A DNA stretch of 64,000 nt from Macrostomum lignano. Taxonomy: Eukaryota. This document shows, piece by piece, positions 1 through 55,095 of this stretch (the stretch's first letter is position 1; each line of letters opens with the position of its first letter). Where the stretch lies: positions 1 through 64,000 of the forward strand of contig NIVC01001767.1 in NCBI GenBank assembly GCA_002269645.1, given 5' to 3'. The notes beneath the pieces are model-generated. The model searched no databases. It was not told the DNA's origin and saw nothing but the letters and a program-made list of their open reading frames with translations. The position numbers and the translations under genes are program-made.

Positions 1-639
1 TTTACAATTTAATTTCACCATTTTCGTAATATATCCGCCTCCTTCTATTTCCGAGTTGCTAATGCTACAGGAGATGGTGCTGACGCTGTTGGTTTTATGC
101 ATACTGTCATGAACGACCAACAAGTGAATTTGGAACTGGATTAACAACCGACGCCGGCTTGATAGTGTTTGCGAGTGAATGGCATGACAGAGTTGGGGTT
201 CTTTGGAGTAATAAAAAATCAGACGGACAACAGTTCGTAATGATGTTCTTAATGACGCGATCAAACGATAACTTATGCAAATATTGATAATGGCGATTGG
301 CATTTATTTGAAATTAATATTTTTAAATCAAAGAGTTTGGTATCAATTAAGATCATACAATGTTTCAACCAAAGTTTATACACTAATTGGCAAAACTTTT
401 TTACATATGATAGCGGAACTTGGGGAGAGTTGGATAAAACAGGAACTTATGGGTTTGGTGCTCGAACTGGAGATCGGATGCCTGCACATTTTATTCGTGG
501 TGCCGCCGTTTGTGGTAGCACATCAGCAGGCTATGATTTTGCTGCGACCGCATATTTGGAACAACCACCCACACAGATCAGCAATGCTGCGACCCTACGG
601 GGCGATCGCCTAAGGCGCGGACTTCGTCCGATCAGTTAA
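1..639 (+). CDS. 3' part of a Polinton protein with an L-type (legume/ConA-like) lectin-like domain; two compensating frameshifts (~130, ~265)
   Basis: Stitched frames read FRVANATGDGADAVGF...IVFASEWHDRVGVLWSN...NIDNGDWHLFEINI...YGFGARTGDRMPAHFIRG, which parallels the L-lectin motifs GADG-x-AF, DG-x-WH and GF-x-A-x-TG...H-x-I. Stop at 637-639. Confidence 0.6.
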
Positions 640-654
640 ATATTTCTATATAAA

Positions 655-861
655 ATGGCTTTTAGTAGAACTCCATCGATGCGGCAAAATAATGTTATTA
701 TTCCTATTCCTAAACAAGAATCAAATATAAAAACATTCAAATCTCATACCAAATTTTTATTTAGTACTGTAAATGTTCAGGATAATAAGAAGCTTCAAGA
801 ATTAATTAAGTTATTAAAAAATCATATTATACTTCAAGAGTTTTTGGAAAATAGGATTTAA
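655..861 (+). CDS. small hypothetical Polinton protein (68 aa)
   Basis: ATG-initiated ORF packed tightly between neighbours (next ATG at 862); no recognisable motif. Confidence 0.45.
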   Translation: MAFSRTPSMRQNNVIIPIPKQESNIKTFKSHTKFLFSTVNVQDNKKLQELIKLLKNHIILQEFLENRI

Positions 862-1601
862 ATGGGAGAAAAAAGAAAGAATCACTCCAATACAATACCT
901 ATTGAGCTCGGGACAAATCCCCAAAGAGCGCGGGAATTCATTTGGTGCTATTAAAAATAGACGAGAATGTCGGTATCTGAAGCAGATAAATGGGAACGCG
1001 ACCGGTTCAACCAACGTAAAGGTCAGATGTTAAGTAATGTTGATCGTATTAACTATGATTATGATTTATATACTAAAAAAGTAAGAAGAGTTTCAAACCA
1101 TATAAGAAATATGGACTTTTTCAATATTGGATTTGGAAGCTTATCAATGTTATGTGTAATCGTTTAGGTATTTTACAATCTATTCCAACTCTTAATTTAT
1201 CTCAATTATTTTTAGGTATTTCAATTGGCTCAATATCAGTTTTGAATTGATCAGAAACTTATCAATACTTTTAGCAATTAAATTATATCTTAAAAAGAAA
1301 GGAAAAAATATAAATCATTAAGAGATTTGCCAAGCAATATAAAAATCAGTTATATTTATATGTGCAAAAAATATTGGATGACGGAGAGATAACGATTCAT
1401 GAATTATCAACCGCGGTTGAGTTATATGAAAAATATTTAAAAGATAGAAATAGAATTTTAGATGTTGAAACTTTTACCGATATGGAATTAAAAGAGTTGA
1501 GACTCGATAAACCCAAAGCTCCACCGATAGAAACATTAGGCATTACGAACCTGAAACTATTGCTACTGGGGCACAAAGCCCGCGGTCGGGAAGTGCGGTA
1601 G
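862..1601 (+). pseudogene. frameshifted Polinton protein with a central hydrophobic hairpin followed by a basic stretch and a 'LDDGEIT' motif
   Basis: ORF pieces 967-1167 (…MDFFNIGFGSLSMLCVIV) and 1362-1601 (KILDDGEITIHEL) are bridged by out-of-frame hydrophobic sequence. The layout matches a recurrent Polinton ORF family I recognise (not database-verified). Confidence 0.55.
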
Positions 1602-1614
1602 AACTTCAGGTTGT

Positions 1615-1962
1615 TTAGTTTTCTAATGCATATGTTATATATTCTTCCCAAAGTGGTAACTCTTCTGATCCTAGGTTTAAATTTTTATCAATACATAAAA
1701 ATTCCAATGACTTTTTCAGTAACATTTCGTTAGGTATGTTACCTATCCTTATAAACTTTGTATTCTCTCGAATAAGAAAATTGAAATAATATCCAACTAA
1801 AATTAAAATCCTTTCGGAGTCTTTCGAACTTAATCCCTTTCCTTTATTTAAATGGAAAAAGTTATTATATAAATAAACATTATTTCCGGGAATTAAAATT
1901 GGATCAGAAATGTCTCTTGTAAGATTTCTTAAAATTGTATTTTTAAAATAGTATATGAGTTT
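1615..1962 (-). CDS. hypothetical Polinton protein; stop-to-stop open frame of ~115 codons absent from the ORF track (start probably frameshifted)
   Basis: Manual translation KNTILRNLTRDISDPILIPGNNVYLYNNFFHLNKGKG...LWEEYITYALEN*; the nearest ATG (1964-1966) is out of frame. Confidence 0.5.
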   Translation of the reverse strand, partial: KLIYYFKNTILRNLTRDISDPILIPGNNVYLYNNFFHLNKGKGLSSKDSERILILVGYYFNFLIRENTKFIRIGNIPNEMLLKKSLEFLCIDKNLNLGSEELPLWEEYITYALEN

Positions 1963-2115
1963 TCATCTTTTTTGTTTTTTCAAATTGATATATTTTAGAA
2001 CATGAATAACACATATGATATATATCTCCGTTTGCTGTTTGCCCTCTGTGCATAGTCACATTACATTATTACATTCGTAAATGTCTTTCATTTTTTGTTA
2101 TTTTTTAGATTAAAA

Positions 2116-2448
2116 ATGGAGAGCTGGTTCAAAACCGATTCTAATGTGATTAATTATCTCACACCCAATATGTTGGAGAATAAAGAATATAATATTATAT
2201 GTTTGAGACAGGTTAAATTTATTGGGCTTCAATCAATATTTTTACAATTAGATGGGCAAAAAATTTTATGTCTAAGCGGAGATGATGTTAAAAATTTTCC
2301 TGTTTTAGTTATTAATAAACCTAAAGCGTTTGTTATGAAATACTGCAACGAGGGTGGATTGCAATTTAAACTAAAACAAACAAATAATAAAAAGAGTGAT
2401 AGGACTGTAAAATTGGCGGCTGTTTGGGAGGATGACGACGAAGACTAA
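2116..2448 (+). CDS. Polinton hypothetical protein with acidic C-terminal tail (candidate ssDNA-binding protein)
   Basis: 110-aa ORF from ATG 2116; beta-strand-like alternating pattern; ends WEDDDED. Confidence 0.55.
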   Translation: MESWFKTDSNVINYLTPNMLENKEYNIICLRQVKFIGLQSIFLQLDGQKILCLSGDDVKNFPVLVINKPKAFVMKYCNEGGLQFKLKQTNNKKSDRTVKLAAVWEDDDED

Positions 2449-2753
2449 ATTTTTTATAAGAAAATGGATAATTTAAAAATGGATAGCTGGTGCAACGGTT
2501 CTCCACCGTCAAGAGGTGCCAAGCGGGCGGCCTTCCGGCCGGCAAAGAGAGAACCGGGGGGGGGGAGAGGCCCTCGAACATAGTGTAAAAACTATGTTTC
2601 GGGGGCAAACCTTCCCCTATCAGAGTGGCTCTGGACCGACCACCCAGAGCACCTCCCTAAACAATATCAAGGTCAAAAACCCGATGGGAAACCATTCGGG
2701 TAATCCACGCCTACCGGCGACAAAAGGATAACAAGACAAGACAAGACAAGAAA

Positions 2754-3134
2754 ATGGATACGATAAAAATCCTTATCACTAAAGAGCGTGAACTTAATGA
2801 TATTAATAAAAAAATAAATATAATTATATCTCAGAAATATCATGAGTATGGGGACGATATGTTTCCCATCCGATATGAAATGGATAAAAGAAAACGTTTT
2901 ATTAAATCTGCAATTGCTTATGCTGAAACAGTAATTGAAATCGAAATAGATAGGTTGGTTAGAAAAATAAAAAAACTTAGGAAAAAAATAAAGGATTGTT
3001 TAAGTTACCCTGACGACTGCGAGGAAAATTGGCCTTCAATATTATATGAAATCGAAATGGATATTATGCTTAAACAATTACATGCTTTAGTTTTTTTCCG
3101 CCCCGAAGGGTCGCGGATTTTATCCGATAAGTAA
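2754..3134 (+). CDS. Polinton hypothetical, predicted helical/coiled-coil protein (126 aa)
   Basis: ATG-initiated, K/E/I-rich; converges on the PolB 3' end. Confidence 0.55.
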   Translation: MDTIKILITKERELNDINKKINIIISQKYHEYGDDMFPIRYEMDKRKRFIKSAIAYAETVIEIEIDRLVRKIKKLRKKIKDCLSYPDDCEENWPSILYEIEMDIMLKQLHALVFFRPEGSRILSDK

Positions 3135-3326
3135 TTTTTCTGTTAATCTCTTCCAGTTATTCAAGACTTTTTCCTTATTTAATTTTTTAAGTTCTTTTGG
3201 AAATGTTGAATAATAATTATCTATATCTTTTTCATATTCTAGAAATGTATTATATTCACAATCACATTCGATTCACAATCACAATCGTAATAATAATTAT
3301 TTATTGCCGCTTTGTATTCATTATAT

Positions 3327-6300
3327 TTACTTATTATATCTTCTTTTTGTTTTATCTTTTATCATATTTTTTATCTCTTCTTTTAAACCATATGGATATG
3401 TTTTAATTTTATCATCTAAATATCTTTTATCATCAAATGGACTTAATGTTTTTTTATCTGTCTCGATGACAAACATCTGATGCTTATCTGAATTTAATCG
3501 ATATTGTGGAGCATGATAATTTTCAATTGTATTAAGGTAATCTAAAAGTACGTTTTTATAATCATCAAATGTTATCTTTTTAACTGCTGCCTTGATACCC
3601 CTTTTATTTTTTTTACCTCTCCCTCCTGTCCTAAAACTTTAAATGCATAGCATTTTGATCTTATTGCTATAAACTCGGTTATGATTTTGCTATTTAATTC
3701 ATCTTTCATTTTAAGTACAACTTTTTATTTTGATCTGATTTTAAAGGATGGTTATCCGGATAGTCGGAGGTATCCAATGTATCCTTAATTTTTTCCATAT
3801 CTTTATAGACATCGAACCTTTGGTTCGCGGCTTTGCCCGATCTCTGTTTCAACCTTAAATACCAAACTGTCGGTGTCTGCATATATTGGATAGTTATCTG
3901 GCCATGTTTTATTTATAACATCATAATAATATTCATACATTACCAGCTTTGCATAATCTAAAACAACCATTCCAATAAATATTGGTTTAAGAAATTTTGT
4001 TGTTTTATTTCTCATATGAATACCCATAAAGTTATCATCAAATTTTATAAAGTCTTTAAAGTTAGGTTTTGAGAAATATTTCTTTGCTTTATCAATATCC
4101 TTTTCTAAATGGAATTGGGTTCTATCTCTAATATTTTCAACCGTTTTTCCATAAAAAGCATTATTCATTAATTTCCAATAATCTTTCTCAAATTTGTTTT
4201 TGACATCTGTCTCTGATTTGAATTAAATCAATATATTTAGCTAACCAATCTTCCTCAATAAACGATATTGTTCGATGTACTTTAGACACTTTTAATCCCT
4301 GCTTTTCATAAAATTGTAGAAGCTTATAATGCACTACATAGTTTTTCTTATCATGTAAATTTAATATTAATTTTTTTGTTGCTAGATGTTTTGCATTATC
4401 TACTTTAAGATAATCTTTTTGTGTTTGTGATAAATCATCTTCATTAACTGAACAATGCTCTGGAGCTAAAGGATATTTATATGTTTTTGCTTTTGCTTCC
4501 CGAGTATATTGCAAATCCACCTCTACAATACAGCCCCTTCCTTCGGGAATATTTTTGTAATAATCGGGTCATCTTCCCATTGGAAATCAGCTATTGGTAA
4601 TTTTTGTTTCATACAACCACCGTATAAATTGTTTGCATCTAGATATAATACATATGATGATTTTTCTTTTTTATTATAATTTGGTAGATATTTATTATTT
4701 ACTTTAGTATATCTATCTCCTAGTACACCCGAGAATCCGCCGCGAATTCCTCTCTCAATCATTAACAACATATCATGATCAGTTAGTAAATCAATCTTAA
4801 CATCTGTATGTTTCAAACCACAAGCCCATGTTAATCCCGGTGCACTGAAACAATATGCGGGATCAATTTTAAAATTCTCATATGTATGATTCCTAAAGTT
4901 TTCAAATGCATCAGCTAATAGGAGAACATCTGCTTTAAGATATAGATTATGATAATCTTTAAATGTTTTACAATTAAAGTATTTCCATACTTTTTGAGCG
5001 TGTTCATAATCCGATTCACTTATATTTGATTGTGATAATGTTGGAATAAAACTTTTTATGGGCGTAATTCGGTATGAAAAAATACGTCTTCAGATGTTAC
5101 ATATTCATATGGATAGATGCCCTTACGAGTTAATAGCATTAGTTCTTCCTCGGATAGTTTTTCTTTTTTGAAACGATTCAATAGTATTGGAAAGTTTTTC
5201 TTTACTATTTCTAAATCCCATGGTTTTGGAACTAATGATGAAACAACATTTGCTAAAGATGTTGATAAGAATCTCAAGGAATCTAGAAAAACTAGATGGG
5301 AGTATTTCTTACCATATGTTATTGATATGTAATTTTCTGATGTTTTAGGTAATATATTTATTTCATATTCATCCTTTCCTAAATGAAGCAATTCTCGAAC
5401 TAAGAAATGAAAATCATATCCGGAACCATTATGAAAAAATACTGGTATTTCCTTACATCCTTTTCCTTCTTTTGCATTACATGATCTACATGCTGCCCCT
5501 CGATAATTTCCTGTTAGATGACAATGTTCTCGTATCTTATTATTCTTACTTAAATGTCTTTTGCACATAAAACAATTTGTTGCATTTTTATAATTGTCTC
5601 TATCCTTATTTGTCATATTAATATTTTTTGATAATTTATCATATTGATTTTGAATATATTCAAATACATTTACTAATGATTCTGCCATGTGCTTAGCTGC
5701 ATCATTACCGTGGTAAGTAATCATCCTTGATTTAAATATATGATCAGCTACAGAGTGTACATATATACAATAACTATTCGGAAACTGTTGTGCCAATTTT
5801 TTGTGCATTCGTCCCGTAGGGTCGCGTGCTTTGCACGATCCCATCATCAGATGCCGTCTGTGATTCTTTTAAGGGAACATTTGTTGCTTCAAAATCAGCA
5901 TATATTACTATTGGTTTTTTAACTGCCATATAATGTTGTTGGAACTTTAGGGTTGCATCTTCAGATGCTGGCATTATAGCATTAGTAAATTTGTGATCTA
6001 AACAAAATCGTTGGTGGTTTTTAAGAGCTGTTTCATCCTTTTTAAATGTAAAACAATTTCTACATAGTGGATATCTATTTCTATTTTCTCTTAAAAAAGA
6101 ACTAATATCTTTTATGTATATATAATGTGTTTCATTTTCGCGCTGCATGTACAAAAGATCGATTTGATCTGGTGCTGTTATATCAGTTGCTGGCTTAACA
6201 AGATAACACCTTTTCTTATACCATTCTGGATCGGTTAAATTTCTTCTAGATCTTTTGGTTCTTCAATTGTAAACACATTAATATTTAAACCATTCATTTT

Positions 6301-7085
6301 TTCAATCTTATATATATCATCTATTGCTACTGGGTATGATATGTTTTTCATTATTATTTCATCCTCATATTGTCTATAATTATATATTTTATTAATGTGT
6401 GATTCTACTTGATTGTGATATTTATGAATTAATAAACACCATAATAAACATTTATTATCTTTATTGTCTGGATTTATAATCATAGGTGATTTAAATTTGA
6501 GCTTCATATGTGATCGTCCTTTAAGAATTTCAATAGGCAATCTTTACTATTGCTGAATTACAGGATACAAATATAAACCCAGATCCGTTTTCTGTCATCT
6601 TATCTATCCATTCATCAAACTCAGCTTCTATTTGATCGAATTGATTGTTGTAATTTCCCATTGATAATAATGTTTTATATGATTCTTGTGAAAAGTTATT
6701 TATTACTTCAATTTCTGAATTTGCATTAAGAATATTTGGTTTTTTAAATTCTGTTTCAACTTCTATTTTATACTTAATTGGCTGTCGTTTGTTATTTGGC
6801 CTTATAGTATAATTGATTAATATGGTCTTTAATTTATCTTTCATTTGTTTAAAATATTCTTTATAATTTGTATTTATATCTATATCTATATATATTACTT
6901 CAGCTCCATTTTGTCCTTGTGGTTGGGTTATCAATATCATTTAATTGTCTTTCTAAACGTATCTCATTTTCTGCCCTAATTCTTGCTTCTATTTCAGCCC
7001 TATCGGCAATTCGTTGTGCTTCGATTTGAGCTATTAATTGTGCTCTAAGTTCAGGGTTGTCGATTTGAGCTAAAATTGCTTCCAT
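3327..7085 (-). pseudogene. polB: protein-primed family B DNA polymerase (pPolB) with N-terminal extension and endonuclease-VII-like Zn motif; many frameshifts
   Basis: Motifs in order across ORF fragments: INPDNKDNKCLLW, YADFEA (ExoI), CFMC...EHCHLTGNYRGAACRSCN, FFHNGSGYDFHF (ExoII), YLKADVLLLAD (ExoIII), YLDANNLYG (motif A), NNAFYGK (motif B), YADTDS (motif C), LSPFDDKRY. Stop at 3327-3329. Inclusion of 6900-7085 as the N-terminus is inferred. Confidence 0.93.
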
Positions 7086-7168
7086 TTTATAGAAAAAATT
7101 TATATAATGTTTGAATTATTGATTTTTTAATTTTGCGTTTTTGGTGTCCAGACCCTCCCCCCAGGAGC

Positions 7169-8162
7169 CTATTCGAGATCTGCTTTTGGTAATAGCAATC
7201 CATTGCCCATAACGTTTGAATTTAAGAAAATTCCTGAACCTGCTTTTGGTCGCATTTCGAGATATAATCCGCTTCCGTCGTGTTTTTCAATGATATTAAA
7301 ATCTTTTCCTAACTTAGTAAAAATCTTCTGAACAGCGGTCTAAAATTGGATCCAATATTGTCAAAAAATCCTTTAGCTTTCTCACCCGTTTTTTCTAAAG
7401 TTTGGCCAAATTCATGTAGTTTATCTGCGACAACTCCGCTTCCTTGGGTTGTTCCTTTTAGTACCAAACCATTCCCGTGATTTGTTCCTTGCAAGAGTAA
7501 ACCTTTTCCAGCTGATAACCTAGCTTCTGCATTTCTTTTTTGCTCGGCTGTTGCTGAACTACTATTAATTGTATCGATAAGTTTTTGTTTAAATTGTGCG
7601 TCCTGCGTTATTTGCTGTCTTTGAAATTCGGCCTCTCTTTTAGCTTTTTCGTCCGCAGCTTTTTTGTCATTTACTGCTTTTGCAATTGCAGCTGCTCCGC
7701 CAGCAACTCCTCCAGCTGCTCCAATTCCTGCAAAAATTATTGGGAGCAAAGCTGCAAGGGGTAAGATTCCCCCTGTTTCGCTCTTAACTCTCCTAGCTGT
7801 TTTACATTATCATGAATTCTTTTTCCGGCTAAACCGACTGCTCCAGCTGCGCCAAGTCCTAAAAGAAGCGGTAGAATGGGTAGTAATCCGCCGTCCTTTT
7901 TAGTGTGAGTCTCCATTAAAAATTTCACATCGGAGTCTGTCAACCTATAATTTCTGCCGCGATTCTTAAAGGATATTGGCCTTCCTTCTTGTGCATATTT
8001 TGCTGCGAGTTTAAATGTATCGATGTCGTAGTCAAACTTTTTACCTAATCGATCCAATCTTTTTAACATTGTGTGGGTTTGCTTATTATCATCAAGATTT
8101 AAGGTATCTACAATTTCTCCTATAAAATATAACCGGTTTTCATCATCATTAACTGAGTCCAT
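7169..8162 (-). CDS. Polinton virion core/membrane-active protein precursor, probably one ORF split by frameshifts near 7800 and 7320
   Basis: DGGLLPILPLLLGLGAAGAVG, then (other frame) ETGGILPLAALLPIIFAGIGAAGGVAGGAAAIAKAVNDKK, then six G-x-G-hydrophobic motifs (GKGLLL, GNGLVL, GSGVV, GSGLYL, GSGIFL, GNGLLL). Stop at 7169-7171. Confidence 0.7.
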
Positions 8163-8172
8163 TTTTATATTG

Positions 8173-8571
8173 TTAAAATTTCTTTAATCCTTTTCCACCT
8201 TTAATAGTATTTAACATTTTATTAAAATCCTGAATATCTTTATTACTTATTGGCGTGGTTTTCGTGGGGGTTTCTGTTGGTTGTGCGGCTTGTGCCAGCT
8301 TTAAATCTTTTATTGCATTTATTTGTGAGAGGGTGTCGTTAAAATCTCTCAATTTCTTTAGTTCTTCTGCCGCTCTAGCTGCTTCAATTCCTCCTTTTAC
8401 AGCATTTGTTATAGAGCCTGCTGCAGAGCCAGCTTGCCCTATAAGCCCCATATTGTCTTTAACAAAATTTGCTGCTGTTCCAACCAAATCAAAAAGTCCC
8501 TCACCTCGGTATTCAATTGGATCTCCTACCTGATACTCATTTATATTTTGCACATGTGTAACGTGTGTCAT
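8173..8571 (-). CDS. Polinton small protein with amphipathic helix (adenovirus pVI / cupiennin-like membrane-lytic candidate)
   Basis: MTHVTH...YRGEGLFDLVGTAANFVKDNMGLIGQAG...IKGGKGLKKF; intact 132-aa ORF from ATG 8571. Confidence 0.7.
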   Translation of the reverse strand: MTHVTHVQNINEYQVGDPIEYRGEGLFDLVGTAANFVKDNMGLIGQAGSAAGSITNAVKGGIEAARAAEELKKLRDFNDTLSQINAIKDLKLAQAAQPTETPTKTTPISNKDIQDFNKMLNTIKGGKGLKKF

Positions 8572-8966
8572 TTTTTGTTCTATTTTTAGTAACAGAAAAA
8601 AAGAATACGAGAACACACAAAAGAATATTTTTCAACCCAAGATGGTGTATATACTGCATTGAGTCATTTTTTTCTGGACGATTTGTTAAAAACTTATTCA
8701 TTGATGGTGGGCACCCCATTTTACTTGTGACGCGCGGAGCCTGTCTTCTTCTTCCTGAGAGATGAGCTAGAACTGGGTTGATGGCTGTGGTTTTTATAGA
8801 GTTGGATGGCTGAGTGGGCGTTCAATTCCTGCTACGGCAAGATTTTGCAAGCTAGCCAATAGTGGCTATGAGAGTAATTTTTTGTTGAGTGTTACTATTA
8901 CCATGACTCAGTTTAAACTCTTTTGTGACCCTTCGCGCCTGCGGCGCGGGCAAGGGGTTATAGAGT

Positions 8967-9233
8967 AGTAGTATAGAAAAAGACGCTTACAGATCAGACC
9001 TTATTTTAATGGCCGTTTTTAAGGTCTTAAGAGGGGGGACGCGAGGGGGGTGTTGGGGAGTGTTTGGAAGTGTTGGGAATGATTTTTATTGTTAGGGGTG
9101 ATTATGGGTGATTAGATGTATTAATGGTGTTTAGATGTGTTTTTTTATTTACCCCCCGTGTCCCCCCTCTAGACCCTTAAAACGGTCATTAAAAAAGTGC
9201 TCTGGGTCTAGAAGCGTCTTTTTATATACTACT
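8967..9233. repeat. Polinton terminal region built as an imperfect inverted repeat (~85-bp arms, both with AGTAGTAT outer ends)
   Basis: 8967 AGTAGTATAGAAAAAGACGCTT... versus ...AAGCGTCTTTTTATATACTACT 9233; arms roughly 80% alike by eye; GC hairpin at 8928-8958 just inside. Confidence 0.8.
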
Positions 9234-9649
9234 GGTGGCACCTCCTTGTTTGGCGAATCGGTTTTCGGTCTGCCAAGGCGATGCGGCTCCGGCTTCCAGG
9301 TGCCGAGTCCTTTGCCGATTGGACTTTCTCTGGCAATCTCACAGAGACAGCAGCTGCACTTCGGGTGGCCCCTTGTTTCCTTTGTCGGTACGACTTTTGA
9401 AAAATCAAAAGGGGCAGGAAGAGCTTCAGAAGTTCGATTCCCCCGTTCAATATCCAGCAGCAGACCCTGGCATCGAGCACACAGAGCAGCTGGGAGAAAC
9501 TCGTTCTTCAAATCGTAGTTTGCATAAAAGTACCGCTGGATGCGAGGTAGAGCTGCTTTGTCAATGCGCTGCATGCCTGACCCGCGCTTAAAGCACACAA
9601 GGCAGACCTTCAGCTGGTTCTCTTCGTGAGATTTTGAGTAGTTTGGCAT
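9234..9649 (-). pseudogene. N-terminal Zn-binding domain of a transposase (RAG1-CND/Chapaev-like), interrupted at 9233/9234
   Basis: MPNYSKSHEENQLKVCLVC...YDLKNEFLPAALCARC...CSCCLC...LGRPK; H-x7-C-x2-C pattern. After ...NKEVPP the reading continues into Polinton TIR sequence. Confidence 0.7.
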
Positions 9650-10149
9650 GGTGGTGTTCAGTTCAAGGCTTTTCAATTCCTAAATGCTGAGATGAGCTGA
9701 TTTATGCTAAATTAATCATTTATATAGCTCAAAAACAAAAAATCTGCCTGTCAGAGAGTGACGCTAAATGCACTTCATTTTTTCGGTGACGCAACTGACC
9801 CTACACTGATAGAGGTTGATCATGCGCACTTAGGGGTGTATGGCGCCTCAGCTTTCGCAATTCGTCATGCATGTACACTGTGCCTTGGGGCTTGGGGGTA
9901 CGCACTCATGGGTGTGTATTTTGCCTTTAATTTAAAAAATCAATGGTCCTTGGTTAAAAATCATGACTTGTTTAGACCTTTCGCCATGCAATTAATGCTA
10001 ATTGAATAATTTACTGATTGTGGAGCTTGACATCGGCAGATTTTTTAAAAACTCTAGAAAAATACTTACCAAGTAATGGTGAACACAATAAAGCAGGTCG
10101 CTTTGTACTAGATTTTTTTAACCCTTACACGCAGCTCCTGCGCGCTGTG
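9234..10149 (-). mobile_element. 5' end of a Transib/RAG-like DNA transposon, truncated by the Polinton insertion
   Basis: Terminus on minus strand CACAGCG (10149-10143) + 23 bp + AAAAAAATC (10119-10111); TATA-like TATAAA near 9720; Zn-finger ORF from 9649. Confidence 0.7.
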
Positions 10150-11320
10150 ACCACAGACAACAACTTCATTAACAACAGTCACCACAGACAATAGCTTCAT
10201 TAACAACAGTCACCACAGACAATAGCTTCATTAACAACAGTCACCACAGACAATAACTTCATTAACAACAGTCACCACAGACAATAACTTCATTAACAAC
10301 AGTCACCACAGACAATAACTTCATTAACAACAGTCACCACAGACAATAACTTCATTAACAACAGTCACCACAGACAATAACTTCATTAACAACAGTCACC
10401 ACAGACAATAACTTCATTAACAACAGTCACCACAGACAATAACTTCATTAACAACAGTCACCACAGACAATAACTTCATTAACAACAGTCACCACAGACA
10501 ATAACTTCATTAACAACAGTCACCACAGACAATAACTTCATTAACAACAGTCACCACAGACAACAACTTCATTAACAACAGTCACCACAGACAATAACTT
10601 CATTAACAACAGTCACCACAGACAACAACTTCATTAACAACAGTCACCACAGACAATAACTTCATTAACAACAGTCACCACAGACAATAACTTCATTAAC
10701 AACAGTCACCACAGACAATAACTTCATTAACAACAGTCACCACAGACAATAACTTCATTAACAACAGTCACCACAGACAACAACTTCATTAACAACAGTC
10801 ACCACAGACAATAACTTCATTAACAACAGTCACCACAGACAATAACTTCATTAACAACAGTCACCACAGACAATAACTTCATTAACAACAGTCACCACAG
10901 ACAATAACTTCATTAACAACAGTCACCACAGACAATAACTTCATTAACAACAGTCACCACAGACAATAACTTCATTAACAACAGTCACCACAGACAATAA
11001 CTTCATTAACAACAGTCACCACAGACAATAACTTCATTAACAACAGTCACCACAGACAACAACTTCATTAACAACAGTCACCACAGACAATAACTTCATT
11101 AACAACAGTCACCACAGACAATAACTTCATTAACAACAGTCACCACAGACAACAACTTCATTAACAACAGTCACCACAGACAATAACTTCATTAACAACA
11201 GTCACCACAGACAACAACTTCATTAACAACAGTCACCACAGACAATAACTTCATTAACAACAGTCACCACAGACAATAACTTCATTAACAACAGTCACCA
11301 CAGACAACAACTTCATTAAC
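10150..11320. repeat. 31-bp minisatellite (CACAGACAATAACTTCATTAACAACAGTCAC), ~38 copies
   Basis: Near-identical tandem units directly abutting the transposon end. Confidence 0.97.
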
Positions 11321-11974
11321 AGCAGCAGTAGTTACCGTGAAGCACGACAAACCGTCTAAAATTAAATCATTTCATGTGCTGTCAAAGTCAAGTCGACAAG
11401 TTAATAAGCTTCATGTAACAAACATTATATTATCAACTGACAAGAGTATCAAATGCAGTCAATATATAACAACTGACTTACTCAAATAAGTCTTAATTCC
11501 AATCCTTTCACCGCACAAATAGGTGGTAATAATATTCACTTCGCTACTGAAGATTGCAAATATTGAGCCTTTCTTATAGACCTGTTGAGCTAGCAGTGCA
11601 AGAGGCACAAGAGTGAGAGCGAGCGACACAGAGCGAGGTGGGGGGCACACGACGCGAAACCAAAGGCGGAGACGAGTTATAAAAGATTGAGGCAGGGGGC
11701 AGAAGCAGAAATCACGTGCTGTACAGTAGCGCTGAAGATGTCGATAAGGACAGAGAATTTGTCAATAAACTATAATTCTTGCCAGAGTTTTCAAACGACG
11801 TGCCAAATTAGAAATGCACGCTTAGCTTATAAATTAATTTGATGAGGCCGGTGTCTGAAAGCGGCAAAGTAACTACCTGATTTTGTGCTAATTGAATATT
11901 TATTGACTAGTCATTGACAAGCAATTTGCATCTCATTAACTGGTACGTGGGCGCTCGCGGTCATATGCTTGAAT

Positions 11975-13303: not shown

Positions 13304-16300
13304 TTAAAAGTGTCCATGAAGCCAGCTCTGTGCGTGAAACTGCACCGCGTAGGCATCTGGGAAGCTGGCCGCGCACAGCCTCTCCTGATGAAGCGTCATA
13401 TTTCCCAGATCGCGACAGTTGGCCGGGTTGCGGTTCACCGACCAACTGAAGGGATTCAAATAGCGGCCTGGCAAAATCAGCAGGTCGCCGCTTAAAACTG
13501 CGCCATCCTTCCGTTTCACGCTGTCGTGTTTCCGGATGTGGCTCCTCAGCTCCTGAAGCAGCATGAGCGGCCCCGTGATGTGCTCCGGCCTCAGCTGGCT
13601 GGATTTCCGCTTATCCAACTTTTCCAATGCGGAGAATTTCTTAAGCTCCTGAGCAGCTCGCCAGGCCAGCTGGAGCCAGAACGGGTGCCCGGGCCGCGAT
13701 GCCATCAGCGAGTTCTGCACGTAGATGCCTTGCACAGTTTCCCAAGGTCGGTTCTGTGCATGGTCCATGCCCGCCAGCACTATGGAGGCCGTGTTAAATA
13801 ACTCGGTGAAATTCTTTAGGCACAGGCTGTCCAAGTCTGCGTAGATGCCGCCGTGTCTGTGCAGGTACAGGTATCTGGAAGAGCGATAAGTAGCCATGGA
13901 GTTACATGTACATGCATTAACATGCAGAAGAATCGCCCTCACCCTCCATGAGAATCGCCCCCCTCACCCTCCATGAGAATCGCCCCTCATCTTCCATGAG
14001 AATCGCCCCCCTCACCCTCCATGAGAATCGCCCCCCTCACCTTCCATGAGAATCGCCTCTCACCCTCCATGAGAATCGCCCCTCACCCTCCATGAGAATC
14101 GCCCCCTCACCTTCCATGAGAATCGCCCCTCGCCCTCCATGAGAATCGCCCCTCACCCTCCATGAGAATCGCCCCCCTCACCTTCCATGAGAATCGCCCC
14201 TCACCCTCCATGAGAATCGCCCCCCTCACCCTCCATGAGAATCGCCCCCTCACCCTCCATGAGAATCGCCCCTCACCCTCCATGAGAATCGCCCCCTCAC
14301 CCTCCATGAGAATCGCCCCTCACCCTCCATGAGAATCGCCCCCTCACCCTCCATGAGAATCGCCCCTCACCTTCCATGAGAATCGCCCCCCTCACCCTCC
14401 ATGAGAATCGCCCCCCTCACCTTCCATGAGAATCGCCCCTCACCCTCCATGAGAATCGCCCCTCACCTTCCATGAGAATCGCCCCCCTCACCCTGCATGA
14501 GAATCGCCCTCACCTTCCATGAGAATCGCCCCCCTCACCCTCCATGAGAATCGCCCCCTCACCCTCCATGAGAATCGCCCCCCTCACCATCCATGAGAAT
14601 CGCCCCTCACCCTCCATGAGAATCGCCCCCCTCACCCTCCATGAGAATCGCCCCTCACCCTCCATGAGAATCGCCCCCTCACCCTCCATGAGAATCGCCC
14701 CTCACCCTCCATGAGAATCGCCCCCTCACCCTCCATGAGAATCGCCCCTCACCTTCCATGAGAATCGCCCCCCTCACCCTCCATGAGAATCGCCCCCCTC
14801 ACTCTCCATGAGAATCGTCCCCTCACCCTCCATGAGAATCGCCCCTCACCCTCCATGAGAATCGCCCCTCACCCTCCATGAGAATCTTCCTTTTGCAACT
14901 CCCCACCGAAAATCTAATATTTGACAGCACAATCTAACAGGTGACCAACACAATCTAACAGGTGACCAACACAATCTAACAGGTGACCAACACAATCTAA
15001 CAGGTGACCAACACAATCTAACAGGTGACCAACACAATCTAACAGGTGACCAACACAATCTAACAGGTGACCAACACAATCTAACAGGTGACCAACACAA
15101 TCTAACAGGTGACCAACACAATCTAACAGGTGACCAACACAATCTAACAGGTGACCAACACAATCTAACAGGTAAACCAACACAATCTAACAGGTAAACC
15201 AACACAATCTAACAGGTAAACCAACACAATTTAACAGGTGACCAACACATTCTAACAGGTAAACCAACACAATCTAACAGGTGACCAACACAATCTAACA
15301 GGTAAACCAACACAATCTAACAGGTAAACCAACACAATTTAACAGGTGACCAACACATTCTAACAGGTAAACCAACACAATCTAACAGGTAAACCAACAC
15401 AATTTAACAGGTGACCAACACATTCTAACAGGTAAACCAACACAATCTAACAGGTAAACCAAAACAATCTAACAGGTAAACCAACACAATCTAACAGGTA
15501 AACCAACACAATCTAACAGGTAAACCAAAACAATCTAACAGGTAAACCAACACAATCTAACAGGTAAACCAACACAATCTAACAGCTAAACCAACACAAT
15601 CTAACAGGTAAACCAAAACAATCTAATAGGTAAACCAACACAATCTAACAGGTAAACCAACACAATCTAACAGGTAAACCAACACAATCTAACAGGTAAA
15701 CCAACACAATCTAACAGGTAAACCAACACAATCTAACAGGTAAACCAACACAATCTAACAGGTAAACCAACACAATCTAACAGGTAAACCAACACAATCT
15801 AACAGGTGACCAACACAATCTAACAGGTAAACCAACACAATCTAACAGGTAAACCAACACAATTTAACAGGTGACCAACACATTCTAACAGGTAAACCAA
15901 CACAATCTAACAGGTAAACCAAAACAATCTAACAGGTAAACCAACACAATCTAACAGGTAAACCAACACAATCTAACAGGTAAACCAACACAATCTAACA
16001 GGTGACCAACACAATCTAACAGGTAAACCAACACAATCTAACAGGTAAACCAACACAATCTAACAGGTGACCAACACAATCTAACAGGTAAACCAACACA
16101 ATCTAACAGGTAAACCAACACAATCTAACAGGTGACCAACACAATCTAACAGGTAAACCAACACAATCTAACAGGTAAACCAACACAATTTAACAGGTGA
16201 CCAACACATTCTAACAGGTAAACCAACACAATCTAACAGGTAAACCAAAACAATCTAACAGGTAAACCAACACAATCTAACAGGTAAACCAACACAATCT

Positions 16301-17870
16301 AACAGGTAAACCAAAACAATCTAACAGGTAAACCAACACAATCTAACAGGTAAACCAACACAATCTAACAGGTAAACCAAAACAATCTAACAGGTAAACC
16401 AACACAATCTAACAGGTGACCAACACAATCTAACAGGTAAACCAACACAATCTAACAGGTAAACCAAAACAATCTAATAGGTAAACCAACACAATCTAAC
16501 AGGTAAACCAACACAATCTAACAGGTAAACCAACACAATCTAACAGGTAAACCAACACAATCTAACAGGTAAACCAACACAATCTAACAGGTAAACCAAC
16601 ACAATCTAACAGGTAAACCAACACAATCTAACAGGTAAACCAACACAATCTAACAGGTAAACCAACACAATCTAACAGGTAAACCAACACAATCTAACAG
16701 GTAAACCAAAACAATCTAACAGGTAAACCAACACAATCTAACAGGTAAACCAACACAATCTAACAGGTAAACCAACACAATCTAACAGGTAAACCAAAAC
16801 AATCTAACAGGTAAACCAACACAATCTAACAGGTAAACCAACACAATCTAACAGGTAAACCAAAACAATCTAACAGGTAAACCAACACAATCTAACAGGT
16901 AAACCAACACAATCTAACAGGTAAACCAACACAATCTAACAGGTAAACCAACACAATCTAACAGGTAAACCAACACAATCTAACAGGTAAACCAACACAA
17001 TCTAACAGGTAAACCAACACAATCTAACAGGTAAACCAACACAATCTAACAGGTAAACCAAAACAATCTAACAGGTAAACCAACACAATCTAACAGGTAA
17101 ACCAACACAATCTAACAGGTAAACCAACACAATCTAACAGGTAAACCAAAACAATCTAACAGGTAAACCAACACAATCTAACAGGTAAACCAACACAATC
17201 TAACAGGTAAACCAACACAATCTAACAGGTAAACCAACACAATCTAACAGGTAAACCAAAACAATCTAACAGGTAAACCAACACAATCTAACAGGTAAAC
17301 CAACACAATCTAACAGGTAAACCAACACAATCTAACAGGTAAAGCAACACAATCTAACAGGTAAACCAAAACAATCTAACAGGTAAACCAACACAATCTA
17401 ACAAGTAACAGCACACCTTCATCACATCCTAGCCTCATCAGTCATTGATCAATTGAACTACCTTGCTAAGTCGGCTCTCTCCACAGGCCTCCTGAGTCCC
17501 AGGTAGGTGTCCAGTAGCCAGGGATAGTGCCTGCGCACCAGCCGCAGGTTGTCAGCGTCAGTCCACAGCCGGTAGTGCCAGTCTGGGAAGCACCGGCGCC
17601 AGCTTTCTGACCAACGCGACGCTCTCGCCGAAGGCAGCCTCCTGGTCTTCCAGCTCTGGTGCACCTGACGGCTGATCGGTACTCGCCTCGTTTCCGTGGC
17701 AACATCAGCGTCTTCAGGCGAGTGAACCAAGGATTCGTGATGCACCTCTTGAGCGTAGCCGAATCGCCGATTGCTCGGGACCAGCTGGCACAACAGTGCC
17801 AACGACAGCAGGACCAGAATAGCACTTAGCAGCGCAACTTTGCAGCGCTTCTTACTATGGAAGGGAGCAA
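13304..17870 (-). CDS. GT32 (DXD sugar-binding, SUR1/OCH1-like) glycosyltransferase, type II membrane; exons 17870-17462 and 13874-13304; first coding exon not identified
   Basis: TM segment (VALLSAILVLLSLALL), VHQSWKT, WHYRLWTDADN, spliced RADLAR|YLYLHRHGGIYADLD, TGPLML. Phase-2 GT-AG intron 17461-13875 joins correctly; stop at 13304-13306. Confidence 0.88.
13928..14890. repeat. 22-25-bp minisatellite (CACCCTCCATGAGAATCGCCCC(C)T) in the GT32 intron
   Basis: Direct reading; unit length varies with the C-run. Confidence 0.96.
14925..17403. repeat. 21-bp minisatellite (AATCTAACAGGT[G/A]A[C/A]CCAACAC-type), ~118 copies, in the GT32 intron
   Basis: Direct reading; GTGACC variant at left grades into GTAAACC variant at right. 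Confidence 0.97.
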
Positions 17871-42042: not shown

Positions 42043-43104
42043 TGACTGACTGACTGACTGACTGACTGACTGACTGACTGACTGACTGACTGACTGACTG
42101 ACTGACTGACTGACTGACTGACTGACTGACTGACTGACTGACTGACTGACTGACTGACTGACTGACTGACTGACTGACTGACTGACTGACTGACTGACTG
42201 ACTGACTGACTGACTGACTGACTGACTGACTGACTGACTGACTGACTGACTGACTGACTGACTGACTGACTGACTGACTGACTGACTGACTGACTGACTG
42301 ACTGACTGACTGACTGACTGACTGACTGACTGACTGACTGACTGACTGACTGACTGACTGACTGACTGACTGACTGACTGACTGACTGACTGACTGACTG
42401 ACTGACTGACTGACTGACTGACTGACTGACTGACTGACTGACTGACTGACTGACTGACTGACTGACTGACTGACTGACTGACTGACTGACTGACTGACTG
42501 ACTGACTGACTGACTGACTGACTGACTGACTGACTGACTGACTGACTGACTGACTGACTGACTGACTGACTGACTGACTGACTGACTGACTGACTGACTG
42601 ACTGACTGACTGACTGACTGACTGACTGACTGACTGACTGACTGACTGACTGACTGACTGACTGACTGACTGACTGACTGACTGACTGACTGACTGACTG
42701 ACTGACTGACTGACTGACTGACTGACTGACTGACTGACTGACTGACTGACTGACTGACTGACTGACTGACTGACTGACTGACTGACTGACTGACTGACTG
42801 ACTGACTGACTGACTGACTGACTGACTGACTGACTGACTGACTGACTGACTGACTGACTGACTGACTGACTGACTGACTGACTGACTGACTGACTGACTG
42901 ACTGACTGACTGACTGACTGACTGACTGACTGACTGACTGACTGACTGACTGACTGACTGACTGACTGACTGACTGACTGACTGACTGACTGACTGACTG
43001 ACTGACTGACTGACTGACTGACTGACTGACTGACTGACTGACTGACTGACTGACTGACTGACTGACTGACTGACTGACTGACTGACTGACTGACTGACTG
43101 ACTG
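42043..43104. repeat. perfect (TGAC)n microsatellite, ~265 copies
   Basis: No interruption seen over ~1.06 kb. Confidence 0.98.
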
Positions 43105-43260
43105 ATTCCTATTGTACATGACTTGACGGGGATCTTTTACCCGGAAAGAGTACAGTGTGGTTACTCATTTAGTATTAGAATTATTCAGTAGTATGTAAAG
43201 AGCGTATAAACTGTTTCAAGAGAACTTTGTCAATAAAAAGCAACAATTTCGTTGCAGCCG

Positions 43261-55035: not shown

Positions 55036-55095
55036 TTGTATTGTGTGTCAGGCCAATTCCGCCAATCAAGATTCTGGGGCTATAACAATATTAAG

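What the first reader, a model, noticed from the sequence alone, without database searches (positions are those of the whole stretch)
9234..10149. RAG-like/Transib transposon: 23RSS-like end combined with a RAG1-CND-like Zn-finger N-terminus
Seen: minus-strand terminus CACAGCG + exactly 23 bp + AAAAAAATC (10149-10111). That is 6/7 and 7/9 identical to the V(D)J RSS heptamer CACAGTG and nonamer ACAAAAACC. About 500 bp inside, after a TATA-like box, an ORF begins with H-x7-C-x2-C...C-x2-C...CxCxxC...GRP. Known (recalled, to be verified): the Transib TIR consensus is heptamer-23 bp-AAAAAAATC; canonical Transib transposases lack the RAG1 N-terminal Zn (CND) region, whereas RAG1L, N-RAG-TP and Chapaev proteins have a related one. 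Inference: this may be a RAG1L-like or intermediate transposon in a lineage (possibly a flatworm) where I know of no description. The catalytic core is not in the window, so this is unproven.
Basis: partly seen in the sequence, partly recalled or inferred. Interest (0 to 1): 0.85.

Follow-up and report, generated by a model that had tools for sequence, protein, structure and literature searches.

The report
Truncated Chapaev-type transposon with RSS-like end
This is the first 916 bases of a flatworm "jumping gene" whose enzyme has the same fold as the antibody-gene recombinase RAG1 and whose end looks like a recombination signal, but it belongs to an already described transposon group (Chapaev type) and this copy is dead, cut off by another inserted element.

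Summary
On the minus strand the element ends at 10149 with CACAGCG, a 23-bp spacer and AAAAAAATC, directly against a 31-bp satellite. An ATG at 9649 opens an ORF with H-x7-C-x2-C…C-x2-C…C-x-C-x2-C. The ORF is cut at 9234 by a low-GC element that carries a protein-primed DNA polymerase.

An uninterrupted copy lies in Macrostomum lignano (NIVC01000691.1). It is 98.5% identical in DNA, about 3.37 kb long, has about 220-bp inverted repeats and one 702-aa ORF, and holds no RAG2-like gene.

A 28-protein family profile hits only RAG1 and RAG1L among solved-structure sequences. A confident model of the 702-aa protein matches only RAG1 and BbRAG1L chains at E <= 0.001 (E as low as 4e-14, 13-15% identity).

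The family also shows the published Chapaev hallmarks: CAC ends, C(2)C, LH and H(4)H motifs, and weak hits to Pfam DUF1280, which the literature equates with Chapaev transposases. The N-terminal zinc domain resembles ZAD and has the RAG1 NZD ligand pattern. Target duplications are 4 bp in two limpet relatives and 5 bp in a second flatworm family.

Six of seven related families keep the layout of CAC heptamer, 22-24 bp and A-rich nonamer.

Verdict: a new member of a known kind, not a RAG-like transposon.

The parts
10143..10149 (-). Terminal heptamer CACAGCG, the outermost bases of the element
   Evidence: Read. It abuts the broken 31-bp satellite unit. Similarity to the M. lignano copy L008 starts within 2 nt of this base.
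10120..10142 (-). 23-bp spacer between heptamer and nonamer
   Evidence: Counted. It is identical at both ends of L008.
10111..10119 (-). A-rich nonamer AAAAAAATC, identical to the published Transib nonamer consensus
   Evidence: An A-rich 9-mer sits at the same distance in 6 of 7 related families.
9930..10149 (-). Terminal inverted repeat of about 220 bp, of which the RSS-like 39 bp are the tip
   Evidence: The L008 inverted repeat (216-220 bp, 98.6% between its two arms) matches window 10147-9930 at 98.2%.
10039..10046 (-). Second subterminal AAAAAATC motif, about 104 nt inside the end
   Evidence: An A6-7TCT motif lies at +103 to +106 in both M. lignano families.
9650..9929 (-). 5' untranslated and promoter region, with TATA-like CTATATAAA at 9727-9719
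   Evidence: The region is collinear with L008 upstream of its ORF. Promoter function is inferred only.
9234..9649 (-). Transposase gene, N-terminal 138 codons only. This is a two-zinc Chapa/NZD-like domain with ligands H8, C16, C19, C57, C60, C98, C100 and C103, followed by a GRP basic motif. The gene is broken once, by an insertion; the rest is not in the window.
   Evidence: 136 of 138 residues are identical to the N-terminus of P0154. The ligand columns are invariant in 25 relatives. zf-AD is hit by 14 of 25 relatives. The model has pLDDT 85 and its best solved analogues are ZAD domains.
10150..11325 (.). Flanking 31-bp satellite (about 38 copies) into which the element inserted. The predicted target duplication is its first 4-5 bases (10150-10153/4).
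   Evidence: The duplication could not be verified because the other end of the element lies outside the window.
1..9233 (-). Neighbour: a low-GC (30-33%) inserted element that truncates the transposon. Its end at 9233 carries 84-bp inverted arms (8967-9048 and 9152-9233). It runs off the window start.
3803..6940 (-). Protein-primed family-B DNA polymerase gene of the inserted element, with an Endonuclease VII-like segment. It is read as about seven ORF pieces with about six changes of frame.
   Evidence: ORFs. Pfam DNA_pol_B_2 and Endonuclease_7 hit one piece. That all pieces belong to one gene is inferred.

Best explanation
Window 9234-10149 is the 5' end of a single-gene cut-and-paste DNA transposon of Macrostomum lignano or a very close relative. 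It comprises the left inverted repeat, the leader and the first 138 codons.

The element belongs to the RAG1/Transib-Chapaev supergroup and is best filed as Chapaev type. Intact copies are about 3.4 kb. They have about 220-bp inverted repeats that begin with a CAC heptamer followed, 22-23 bp further in, by an A-rich nonamer. They encode one protein of about 700 aa. That protein has an N-terminal two-zinc Chapa/NZD-like domain, a small C2HC finger, and a RAG1-fold DDE core with C(2)C, LH and H(4)H motifs.

By homology with RAG1, RAG1L and Transib (inferred, not shown here), the transposase would bind each end through the heptamer and the nonamer. It would cut at the CAC by nicking and hairpin formation, then insert with a 4-5 bp stagger.

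The window copy is inactive. It inserted into a 31-bp satellite and was later cut after codon 138 by a polymerase-B-bearing, Polinton-like element.
For: Same family as an intact copy:
- The window shares 918 bp at 98.5% with L008 and 136 of 138 aa with P0154.
- L008 has about 220-bp inverted repeats and a single ORF.

RAG1 relationship:
- The 28-protein profile hits only RAG1L (6b40, E 2.5e-6) and RAG1 chains in the PDB sequences. The alignment runs from the second D with its C-x2-C to the H-x4-H and E.
- The AF2 model has pLDDT 88.
- By Foldseek the 44 matches with E <= 0.001 are all RAG1 or BbRAG1L (E 4e-14 to 9e-9, TM 0.45-0.60 on target length, 560-680 columns). The next hit is Hermes at E 8e-3.

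Chapaev features:
- CAC…GTG ends.
- The C(2)C, LH and H(4)H positions are invariant or nearly invariant columns in the 28-protein alignment, and these motifs are listed as Chapaev hallmarks in PMC4079192.
- DUF1280 is hit by 6 of 40 members, one above Pfam's cut-off. DUF1280 is equated with Chapaev transposases and is said to cluster with RAG1 in PMC3985635.
- 4-bp duplications occur in two Patella caerulea relatives.

N-terminal domain:
- The H-x7-C-x2-C start is the same as mouse NZD H102/C110/C113.
- zf-AD hits and ZAD as best structural analogue match the published ZFa-ZAD likeness.

RSS-like ends are conserved in 6 of 7 families.
Against: - No bona fide Chapaev, Chapaev3 or Transib transposase sequence was available in the tools, so no phylogeny was made. 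The Chapaev label therefore rests on hallmarks and a weak Pfam link. P0154 itself has no Pfam hit at E <= 1.
- The one clean target duplication in M. lignano is 5 bp (TCTCC). That is the Transib/RAG value, not the 3-4 bp given for Chapaev.
- The full copy of the window's own family reads as either 4 or 5 bp, and both of its terminal bases deviate.
- The heptamer-23-nonamer layout is the published hallmark of Transib ends. I found no open paper describing it for Chapaev.
- The N-terminal profile gave no hit (E <= 10) to the full-length mouse RAG1 chains that the PDB sequence set holds.
Confidence: 0.68

Rival explanations
1. The family is a separate, undescribed clade within the RAG1/Transib-Chapaev supergroup. 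It would combine a Chapa/NZD-type zinc domain with Transib/RAG-type ends (heptamer-23-nonamer) and 4-5 bp duplications, and would sit between Chapaev and Transib/RAGL.
For: - RSS23-like ends are conserved in 6 of 7 families from flatworm, limpet and marine metagenomes.
- A second M. lignano family has a 5-bp duplication.
- The Pfam link to DUF1280 is weak (6 of 40), while the profile finds RAG1/RAG1L directly.
- Published surveys report no NZD-like domain in any known Transib family.
Against: Every hallmark listed for Chapaev is present. Chapaev elements are known from molluscs, cnidarians and lancelets and carry this same domain. Without comparators, 'separate clade' is simply untested.
Confidence: 0.2
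2. It is a canonical Transib-clade transposon that acquired an N-terminal zinc domain.
For: The nonamer is identical to the Transib consensus and the spacer is 23 bp. One relative has a 5-bp duplication. The transposase has the RAG1-fold core.
Against: - Canonical Transib transposases have no domain besides the core.
- The family hits DUF1280/Chapaev.
- The limpet relatives have 4-bp duplications.
- No Transib chain appeared among the PDB hits, although I could not confirm that the libraries hold one.
Confidence: 0.08
3. It is a RAG-like (RAG1L plus RAG2L) transposon, or a direct intermediate towards one.
For: The ends are RSS-like, the zinc-ligand pattern is NZD-like and the core has the RAG1 fold.
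Against: - The complete copies are 3.0-3.9 kb with one ORF and no kelch gene inside or beside them.
- Identity to RAG1/RAG1L is only 13-14% in the best matches.
- Both ends carry the 23-type spacer.
- There is no RING finger; the zinc domain is followed by a small C2HC finger.
Confidence: 0.03
4. The heptamer-23-nonamer resemblance is a coincidence of an A-rich subterminal repeat and has no role in end recognition.
For: AAAAAAATC is not rare in the window. Similar A6-7TC motifs recur at about +104 and elsewhere in the ends. One marine family lacks the A-run at +31.
Against: The position is conserved at 22-24 bp in six families from two phyla and from metagenomes, against a 0-5% background. The limpet elements and the window share AGGGTY just before the A-run.
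Confidence: 0.05

Closest known systems
Chapaev transposons (Kapitonov & Jurka 2007; CMC-Chapaev of Yuan & Wessler 2011; a clade of the Transib superfamily in Kapitonov & Koonin 2015)
   Same: - A single transposase gene of about 700 aa.
- An N-terminal complex zinc finger (Chapa domain).
- CAC…GTG termini.
- C(2)C, LH and H(4)H motifs around a DDE core that is distantly related to RAG1.
- A 4-bp duplication in the limpet relatives.
- A Pfam DUF1280 link.
   Different: - One M. lignano relative has a 5-bp duplication.
- The ends carry a conserved heptamer, 22-24 bp, A-rich nonamer layout, which I did not find described for Chapaev.
- Most members, including the window's own protein, fall below the DUF1280 threshold.
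- No direct sequence comparison with a named Chapaev element was possible.
Canonical Transib transposons (Kapitonov & Jurka 2005)
   Same: The end layout is CAC heptamer, 23 bp and AAAAAAATC, with a nonamer identical to the consensus. The core is a RAG1-like DDE. One relative has a 5-bp duplication.
   Different: Transib transposases have no Chapa/NZD-like domain. Here the inverted repeats are long (150-260 bp). The limpet relatives have 4-bp duplications.
RAGL transposons (amphioxus ProtoRAG BbRAG1L/2L; RAGL families A-D) and vertebrate RAG1
   Same: The core fold matches (Foldseek E down to 4e-14). The second D, C-x2-C, H-x4-H and E align. The N-terminal ligand pattern is H-x7-C-x2-C … C-x2-C … three further ligands, as in the RAG1 NZD.
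   Different: - There is no RAG2L partner gene.
- There is no RING finger.
- Core identity is 13-14% in the best matches.
- There is no 12/23 asymmetry.
- The protein is about 700 aa rather than about 1000 aa.
- The N-terminal profile does not find mouse RAG1 by sequence.
ZAD (zf-AD, PF07776) domains of insect zinc-finger proteins
   Same: The C-x2-C … C-x2-C module of the N-terminal domain hits zf-AD in 14 of 25 relatives. ZAD crystal structures are the best, though weak, structural matches.
   Different: Here the module is embedded in a two-zinc domain with an extra N-terminal His and a C-terminal C-x-C-x2-C. All scores are below Pfam's threshold and the Foldseek E-values are 0.7-2.5.

Membership tests
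RAG1/Transib-Chapaev supergroup (RAG1-fold DDE transposases) | Catalytic core with the RAG1 fold | tested here: met
   The model of P0154 has pLDDT 88. The 44 Foldseek matches with E <= 0.001 are all RAG1 or BbRAG1L chains.
RAG1/Transib-Chapaev supergroup (RAG1-fold DDE transposases) | A DDE triad with a long second-D-to-E distance, C-x2-C after the second D and H-x4-H before the E | tested here: met
   D, D, C, C, H, H and E are invariant or nearly invariant columns. In P0154 the second D is 244 residues from the E. The profile aligns these motifs to RAG1/RAG1L. The assignment of the first D is inferred.
Chapaev | 5'-CAC … GTG-3' termini | tested here: met
   Seen in the window and in L005, L016, L017, L018, L019 and L012. 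The two ends of L008 deviate at base 1 or 2.
Chapaev | C(2)C, LH and H(4)H motifs in the transposase (PMC4079192) | tested here: met
Chapaev | N-terminal Chapa domain | tested here: inconclusive
   The ligand pattern fits the published type I description, with one N-terminal and three C-terminal ligands plus a C4 module. The C4 module is ZAD-like. No Chapa domain sequence or model was available for direct comparison.
Chapaev | Target site duplication of 3-4 bp | tested here: inconclusive
   4 bp in the two Patella relatives (CCCA, CAGG). 5 bp in M. lignano family B (TCTCC). 4 or 5 bp in the full copy of the window's family. Not testable for the window copy.
Chapaev | Match to Pfam DUF1280, which is equated with Chapaev transposases in PMC3985635 | tested here: inconclusive
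   6 of 40 members hit at E <= 1, the best at 6.4e-7, and one (P0043) lies above the cut-off. P0154 has no hit.
Chapaev | Placement inside the Chapaev clade in a transposase phylogeny | not testable with these tools
   No named Chapaev, Chapaev3 or Transib protein could be fetched. Published consensus sequences were deliberately not used.
Canonical Transib | Inverted repeat made of a CAC heptamer, a spacer of about 23 bp and an A-rich nonamer | tested here: met
Canonical Transib | Transposase consists of the core only, with no N-terminal zinc domain | tested here: not met
   A conserved two-zinc domain and a C2HC finger precede the core. For the definition.
Canonical Transib | 5-bp target site duplication | tested here: inconclusive
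   5 bp in one family and 4 bp in two others.
RAGL transposon (RAG1L-RAG2L) | A RAG2L (kelch) gene between the same inverted repeats | tested here: not met
   L008, L005, L016 and L017 are 3.0-3.8 kb elements with one long ORF, and no kelch gene is called in the loci.
RAGL transposon (RAG1L-RAG2L) | Asymmetric 12/23-type ends | tested here: not met
   Both L008 ends carry the nonamer at +31, i.e. a 23-bp spacer.
RAGL transposon (RAG1L-RAG2L) | Core clearly similar in sequence to RAG1 (over 30% for TransibSU, per PMC4411706) | tested here: not met
   Identity in the structural alignments is 13-14% for the best matches. No hit to Pfam RAG1 appears among the families listed.
RAG1 NZD | Sequence similarity to the RAG1 N-terminal zinc domain | tested here: inconclusive
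   The H-x7-C-x2-C spacing and the number of ligands are the same as in mouse. The 25-sequence profile nevertheless gives no hit at E <= 10 to the full-length mouse RAG1 chains present in the PDB sequence set. The NZD structure is not in the fold library.
Polinton/Maverick (the neighbouring insert) | Protein-primed family-B polymerase together with an integrase and capsid genes | tested here: inconclusive
   The polymerase is present. No integrase or capsid gene was identified in the 9.2 kb that lies in the window. The rest of the insert is outside the window.

The most novel reading that the evidence does not exclude
The family is an unrecognised clade, widespread in Spiralia and in marine eukaryotes, of single-gene transposons. 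It would unite three things: a Chapa/NZD-type two-zinc domain, a RAG1-fold core that appears to include a nonamer-binding-like region, and conserved RSS23-type ends. If so, recombination-signal-like ends and the RAG1 N-terminal zinc domain already coexisted in one transposon lineage without RAG2L, before the RAGL lineage arose.
Probability: 0.22. Interest if true: 0.7.

Novelty: new member of a known kind. Interest (0 to 1): 0.38.

Why it matters
The origin of V(D)J recombination is traced to transposons of this supergroup. Recent work states that no known Transib family carries the RAG1 N-terminal zinc domain and that only Chapaev elements do.

This family adds three things:
- a well-sampled set of relatives (825 at E <= 0.001) from a flatworm, a limpet and marine metagenomes;
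- a high-confidence RAG1-fold model;
- evidence, which I did not find in the open literature, that elements carrying the Chapa-type domain also keep heptamer-spacer-nonamer ends.

That is useful comparative material for asking when RSS-type end recognition arose. The window copy itself is an ordinary dead fragment.

Tried and rejected
- **Single-sequence searches.** Pfam and PDB searches with the window ORF and with fragments from related contigs found nothing useful.
- **Word-index homology search.** With the window ORF it returned one 172-aa relative and missed the 99%-identical P0154. A search with the 28-protein alignment timed out.
- **Metagenome scan.** It added only one degraded fragment. 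The early relatives L001-L004 are all broken by several frame changes or stops and were used only as they stand.
- **L005, L006 and L007.** These are duplicated genomic segments, not independent insertions, so they give one target duplication, not three.
- **Flanks of metagenome contigs (L012, L018).** They show no duplication and share flanks between ends. They are probably chimeric assemblies across near-identical inverted repeats, so I set them aside for duplication length.
- **8967-9233 as a small MITE inside the ORF.** Rejected, because the transposase frame does not resume to its left.
- **Second AAAAAAATC at 18638-18646.** It has no heptamer and is a chance occurrence.
- **Internal CACAGCA-13-AAAAAAATC in L005.** It first looked like a 12-type end, but alignment of the two ends puts the true terminus 82 nt further out.
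- **Control for Transib in the PDB sequence set.** The control, run with a RAG1L segment taken from tool output, was uninformative.
Full report
**1. The observation**

On the minus strand the sequence reads CACAGCG (10149-10143), 23 bp (10142-10120) and AAAAAAATC (10119-10111). Immediately outside lies a 31-bp satellite of about 38 copies at 98% regularity (10150-11325). The CAC follows a satellite unit broken after …GTCTGTGGT, so the boundary is fixed independently of the motif.

Kapitonov & Jurka 2005 give the Transib consensus as CACAATG, a 23-bp spacer and AAAAAAATC, and the RSS as CACAGTG and ACAAAAACC (PMC1131882).

The nonamer alone is not rare. It occurs twice in the window against 1.8 expected, and the second copy has no heptamer.

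The ATG is at 9649, preceded by CTATATAAA at 9727-9719. The ORF has H8, C16-x2-C19, C57-x2-C60 and C98-x-C100-x2-C103.

**2. What interrupts it**

Compared with an intact relative, the window sequence diverges after …GGTGCCACC at 9234. The insert then begins AGTAGTATATAAAAAG.

- The insert's end forms 84-bp inverted arms (8967-9048 and 9152-9233).
- To its left the GC content falls to 30-33%.
- The minus strand there carries pieces of a protein-primed family-B polymerase with an Endonuclease VII-like segment. It is read as about seven ORF pieces with about six frame changes.
- No part of the transposase resumes anywhere in the window.

The transposase gene is therefore broken once, by insertion, and the remainder lies outside the window. 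The 138 codons that are present carry no stop or frameshift.

**3. Finding relatives**

The word-index search found a single 172-aa relative at 65% identity on a 1.5-kb Logan contig. That contig continues, in other frames, into …KIGVDGG… and …DMKLAN…PCPWCE. Further fragments were all degraded.

A full HMMER search of 1.84 billion representatives, using a profile of the window ORF and that relative, found 825 proteins at E <= 0.001. Many are 650-770 aa long with the domain at their N-terminus.

A follow-up search returned two Macrostomum lignano proteins, P0153 (710 aa) and P0154 (702 aa). The window ORF is identical to P0154 at 136 of 138 residues.

The window's 918 bp are 98.5% identical to locus L008 (NIVC01000691.1). 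There the first approximately 217 bp recur inverted at the far end. The family's full element is about 3.37 kb, with about 220-bp inverted repeats at 98.6% identity and one ORF. No kelch gene lies in or next to it. The window thus most likely comes from M. lignano or a close relative.

**4. The transposase**

An alignment of 28 full-length members has invariant or nearly invariant D, D, C-x2-C, LH, H-x4-H and E…E…H columns.

- As a profile it hits only RAG1L (6b40, E 2.5e-6) and RAG1 chains (E 1.6e-5 to 2.3e-4) among 177,635 PDB sequences. The alignment runs from the second D with its C-x2-C through LH and a 'GN' motif to the H-x4-H and the catalytic E.
- An AlphaFold2 model of P0154, built with 40 family sequences, has mean pLDDT 88.
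- By Foldseek, its 44 matches with E <= 0.001 are all RAG1 or BbRAG1L (E 3.7e-14 to 8.5e-9; TM 0.45-0.60 on target length; 560-680 aligned columns; 12-15% identity, 13-14% for the best). Hermes is next at E 8e-3.
- Alignments are about 80-90 columns longer to several chains about 70 residues longer, one of which (3jbw_A) is labelled as containing the nonamer-binding domain. This suggests, but does not prove, an NBD-like region.

**5. Which branch of the supergroup**

Published hallmarks of Chapaev are 3-4 bp duplications, CAC…GTG ends and the C(2)C, LH and H(4)H motifs (PMC4079192). Chapaev also carries the N-terminal Chapa domain that it shares with RAG1 (PMC4411706). Kapitonov & Koonin place Chapaev and Chapaev3 inside the Transib superfamily.

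In this family 6 of 40 members hit DUF1280. The best is at 6.4e-7 and one is above the cut-off. None shows Pfam RAG1 among the families listed.

There is no RAG2L gene, no RING finger and no 12/23 asymmetry. I therefore file the element as Chapaev type, not as RAGL. I could not build a phylogeny because no named Chapaev or Transib protein can be fetched with these tools.

**6. The N-terminal domain**

In 25 relatives H8, C16, C19, P53, C57, C60, C98, C100 and C103 are invariant. A GRP motif and a C-x2-C-x9-H-x(1-3)-C finger follow, and the window copy is cut just before that finger.

Mouse RAG1 NZD uses H102, C110, C113, C175, C178, H206, C210 and C213 (bioRxiv 10.64898/2026.01.24.700457). That is the same H-x7-C-x2-C start, a second C-x2-C, and then three C-terminal ligands. 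This corresponds to the 'type I' pattern described for Chapa and RAG1L domains.

- 14 of 25 members hit Pfam zf-AD, the best at 8.6e-6, all below the cut-off.
- The domain model (pLDDT 85) finds ZAD crystal structures as its eight best PDB matches, at non-significant E of 0.7-2.5. The preprint reports the same ZFa-ZAD likeness.
- The profile does not find the full-length mouse RAG1 chains that the PDB sequence set contains.

Homology to the NZD is therefore supported by pattern and architecture, not by statistics.

**7. Ends and target duplications across the family**

| Locus | End layout | Target duplication |
|---|---|---|
| Window / L008 (M. lignano family A) | CACAGCG-23-AAAAAAATC at both ends | 4 (GTCT) or 5 (TCTGT); the two terminal bases deviate |
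| L005 (M. lignano family B, 7419-11234) | CACACAT-22-AAAATAAAG | 5 bp, TCTCC, clean |
| L016 (Patella caerulea) | CACGGGT-22-AAAAAAATT | 4 bp, CCCA |
| L017 (Patella caerulea) | CACATAG-22-AAAAAAAAG | 4 bp, CAGG |
| L018 (metagenome) | CACGGTG-24-AAAAAATGC | none seen; contig probably chimeric |
| L019 (metagenome) | CACAGTG-23-AAAAAAATT | not readable; contig starts inside the repeat |
| L012 (marine family) | CACAGTT, no A-run at that position | none seen; contig probably chimeric |

Six of seven families thus have at least 7 A in a 9-mer starting 22-24 nt after the heptamer. Elsewhere in the same 300-nt ends the frequency is 0-5%. The limpet elements and the window share AGGGTY just before the A-run. 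The RSS23-like layout is therefore a conserved trait of the family and not a coincidence. I found no open paper that links Chapaev to a nonamer.

**8. How it most likely works**

Shown here:
- a RAG1-fold DDE protein with a zinc-binding C-x2-C and H-x4-H pair;
- bipartite inverted repeats;
- 4-5 bp duplications;
- multiple near-identical copies, including one identical protein on 14 marine contigs.

Inferred from RAG1, RAG1L and Transib:
- recognition of the ends through heptamer and nonamer;
- cleavage at the CAC by nick and hairpin formation;
- staggered integration.

The role of the zinc domain is unknown.

**9. Verdict**

This is a truncated copy of a Chapaev-type member of the RAG1/Transib supergroup in a flatworm. 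It is a new member of a known kind, with one feature worth recording: the conserved RSS23-like ends.

Noticed in passing
window 1-9233: A low-GC (30-33%) inserted element carries a protein-primed family-B polymerase with an Endonuclease VII-like segment. The polymerase is read in about seven ORF pieces. Three small Gly/Ala-rich ORFs lie near the element's end. It is Polinton/Maverick-like, but no integrase or capsid gene was identified in the part that lies in the window.
   Followed up: partly
window 8967-9233: The end of the insert is an 84-bp inverted-arm structure (81% identity between arms, 103-bp loop) that starts AGTAGTATA. It could be a terminal hairpin-like repeat of the insert or a separate small element. 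This was not resolved.
   Followed up: partly
window 10150-64000: The rest of the window is dominated by long, very regular mini- and microsatellites. Examples are a 22-bp unit x114 (14928-17408), a 26-bp unit x95 (47894-50318), a 22-bp unit x94 (53028-55049) and a perfect (TGAC)x266 (42043-43105).
   Followed up: no
window 57475-57523: An interstitial run of about 8 ACCCTA units (the complement of TTAGGG, telomere-type) lies directly beside a 25-bp satellite.
   Followed up: no
L005 7419-11234 (M. lignano NIVC01000927.1): This is a second M. lignano family (P0153, 710 aa) with 154-bp inverted repeats at 80% identity. An A6-7TCT motif lies about 104 nt inside each end, at the same distance as in the window's family. 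At its 3' side only there is an internal CACAGCA-13-AAAAAAATC.
   Followed up: partly
L010-L015 (marine metagenome contigs, some from Tara Oceans PRJEB4352): One identical 773-aa family protein is encoded on 14 contigs from different marine samples. This points to a recently amplified family in some planktonic eukaryote. Its end, CACAGTTGTCCTGAAG, shares TGTCCTGAAG with M. lignano family B.
   Followed up: partly
L005, L006, L007: The three loci carrying P0153 are 97.5-99.9% identical over more than 6-12 kb that include the flanks. They are duplicated genomic segments, not separate insertions.
   Followed up: yes
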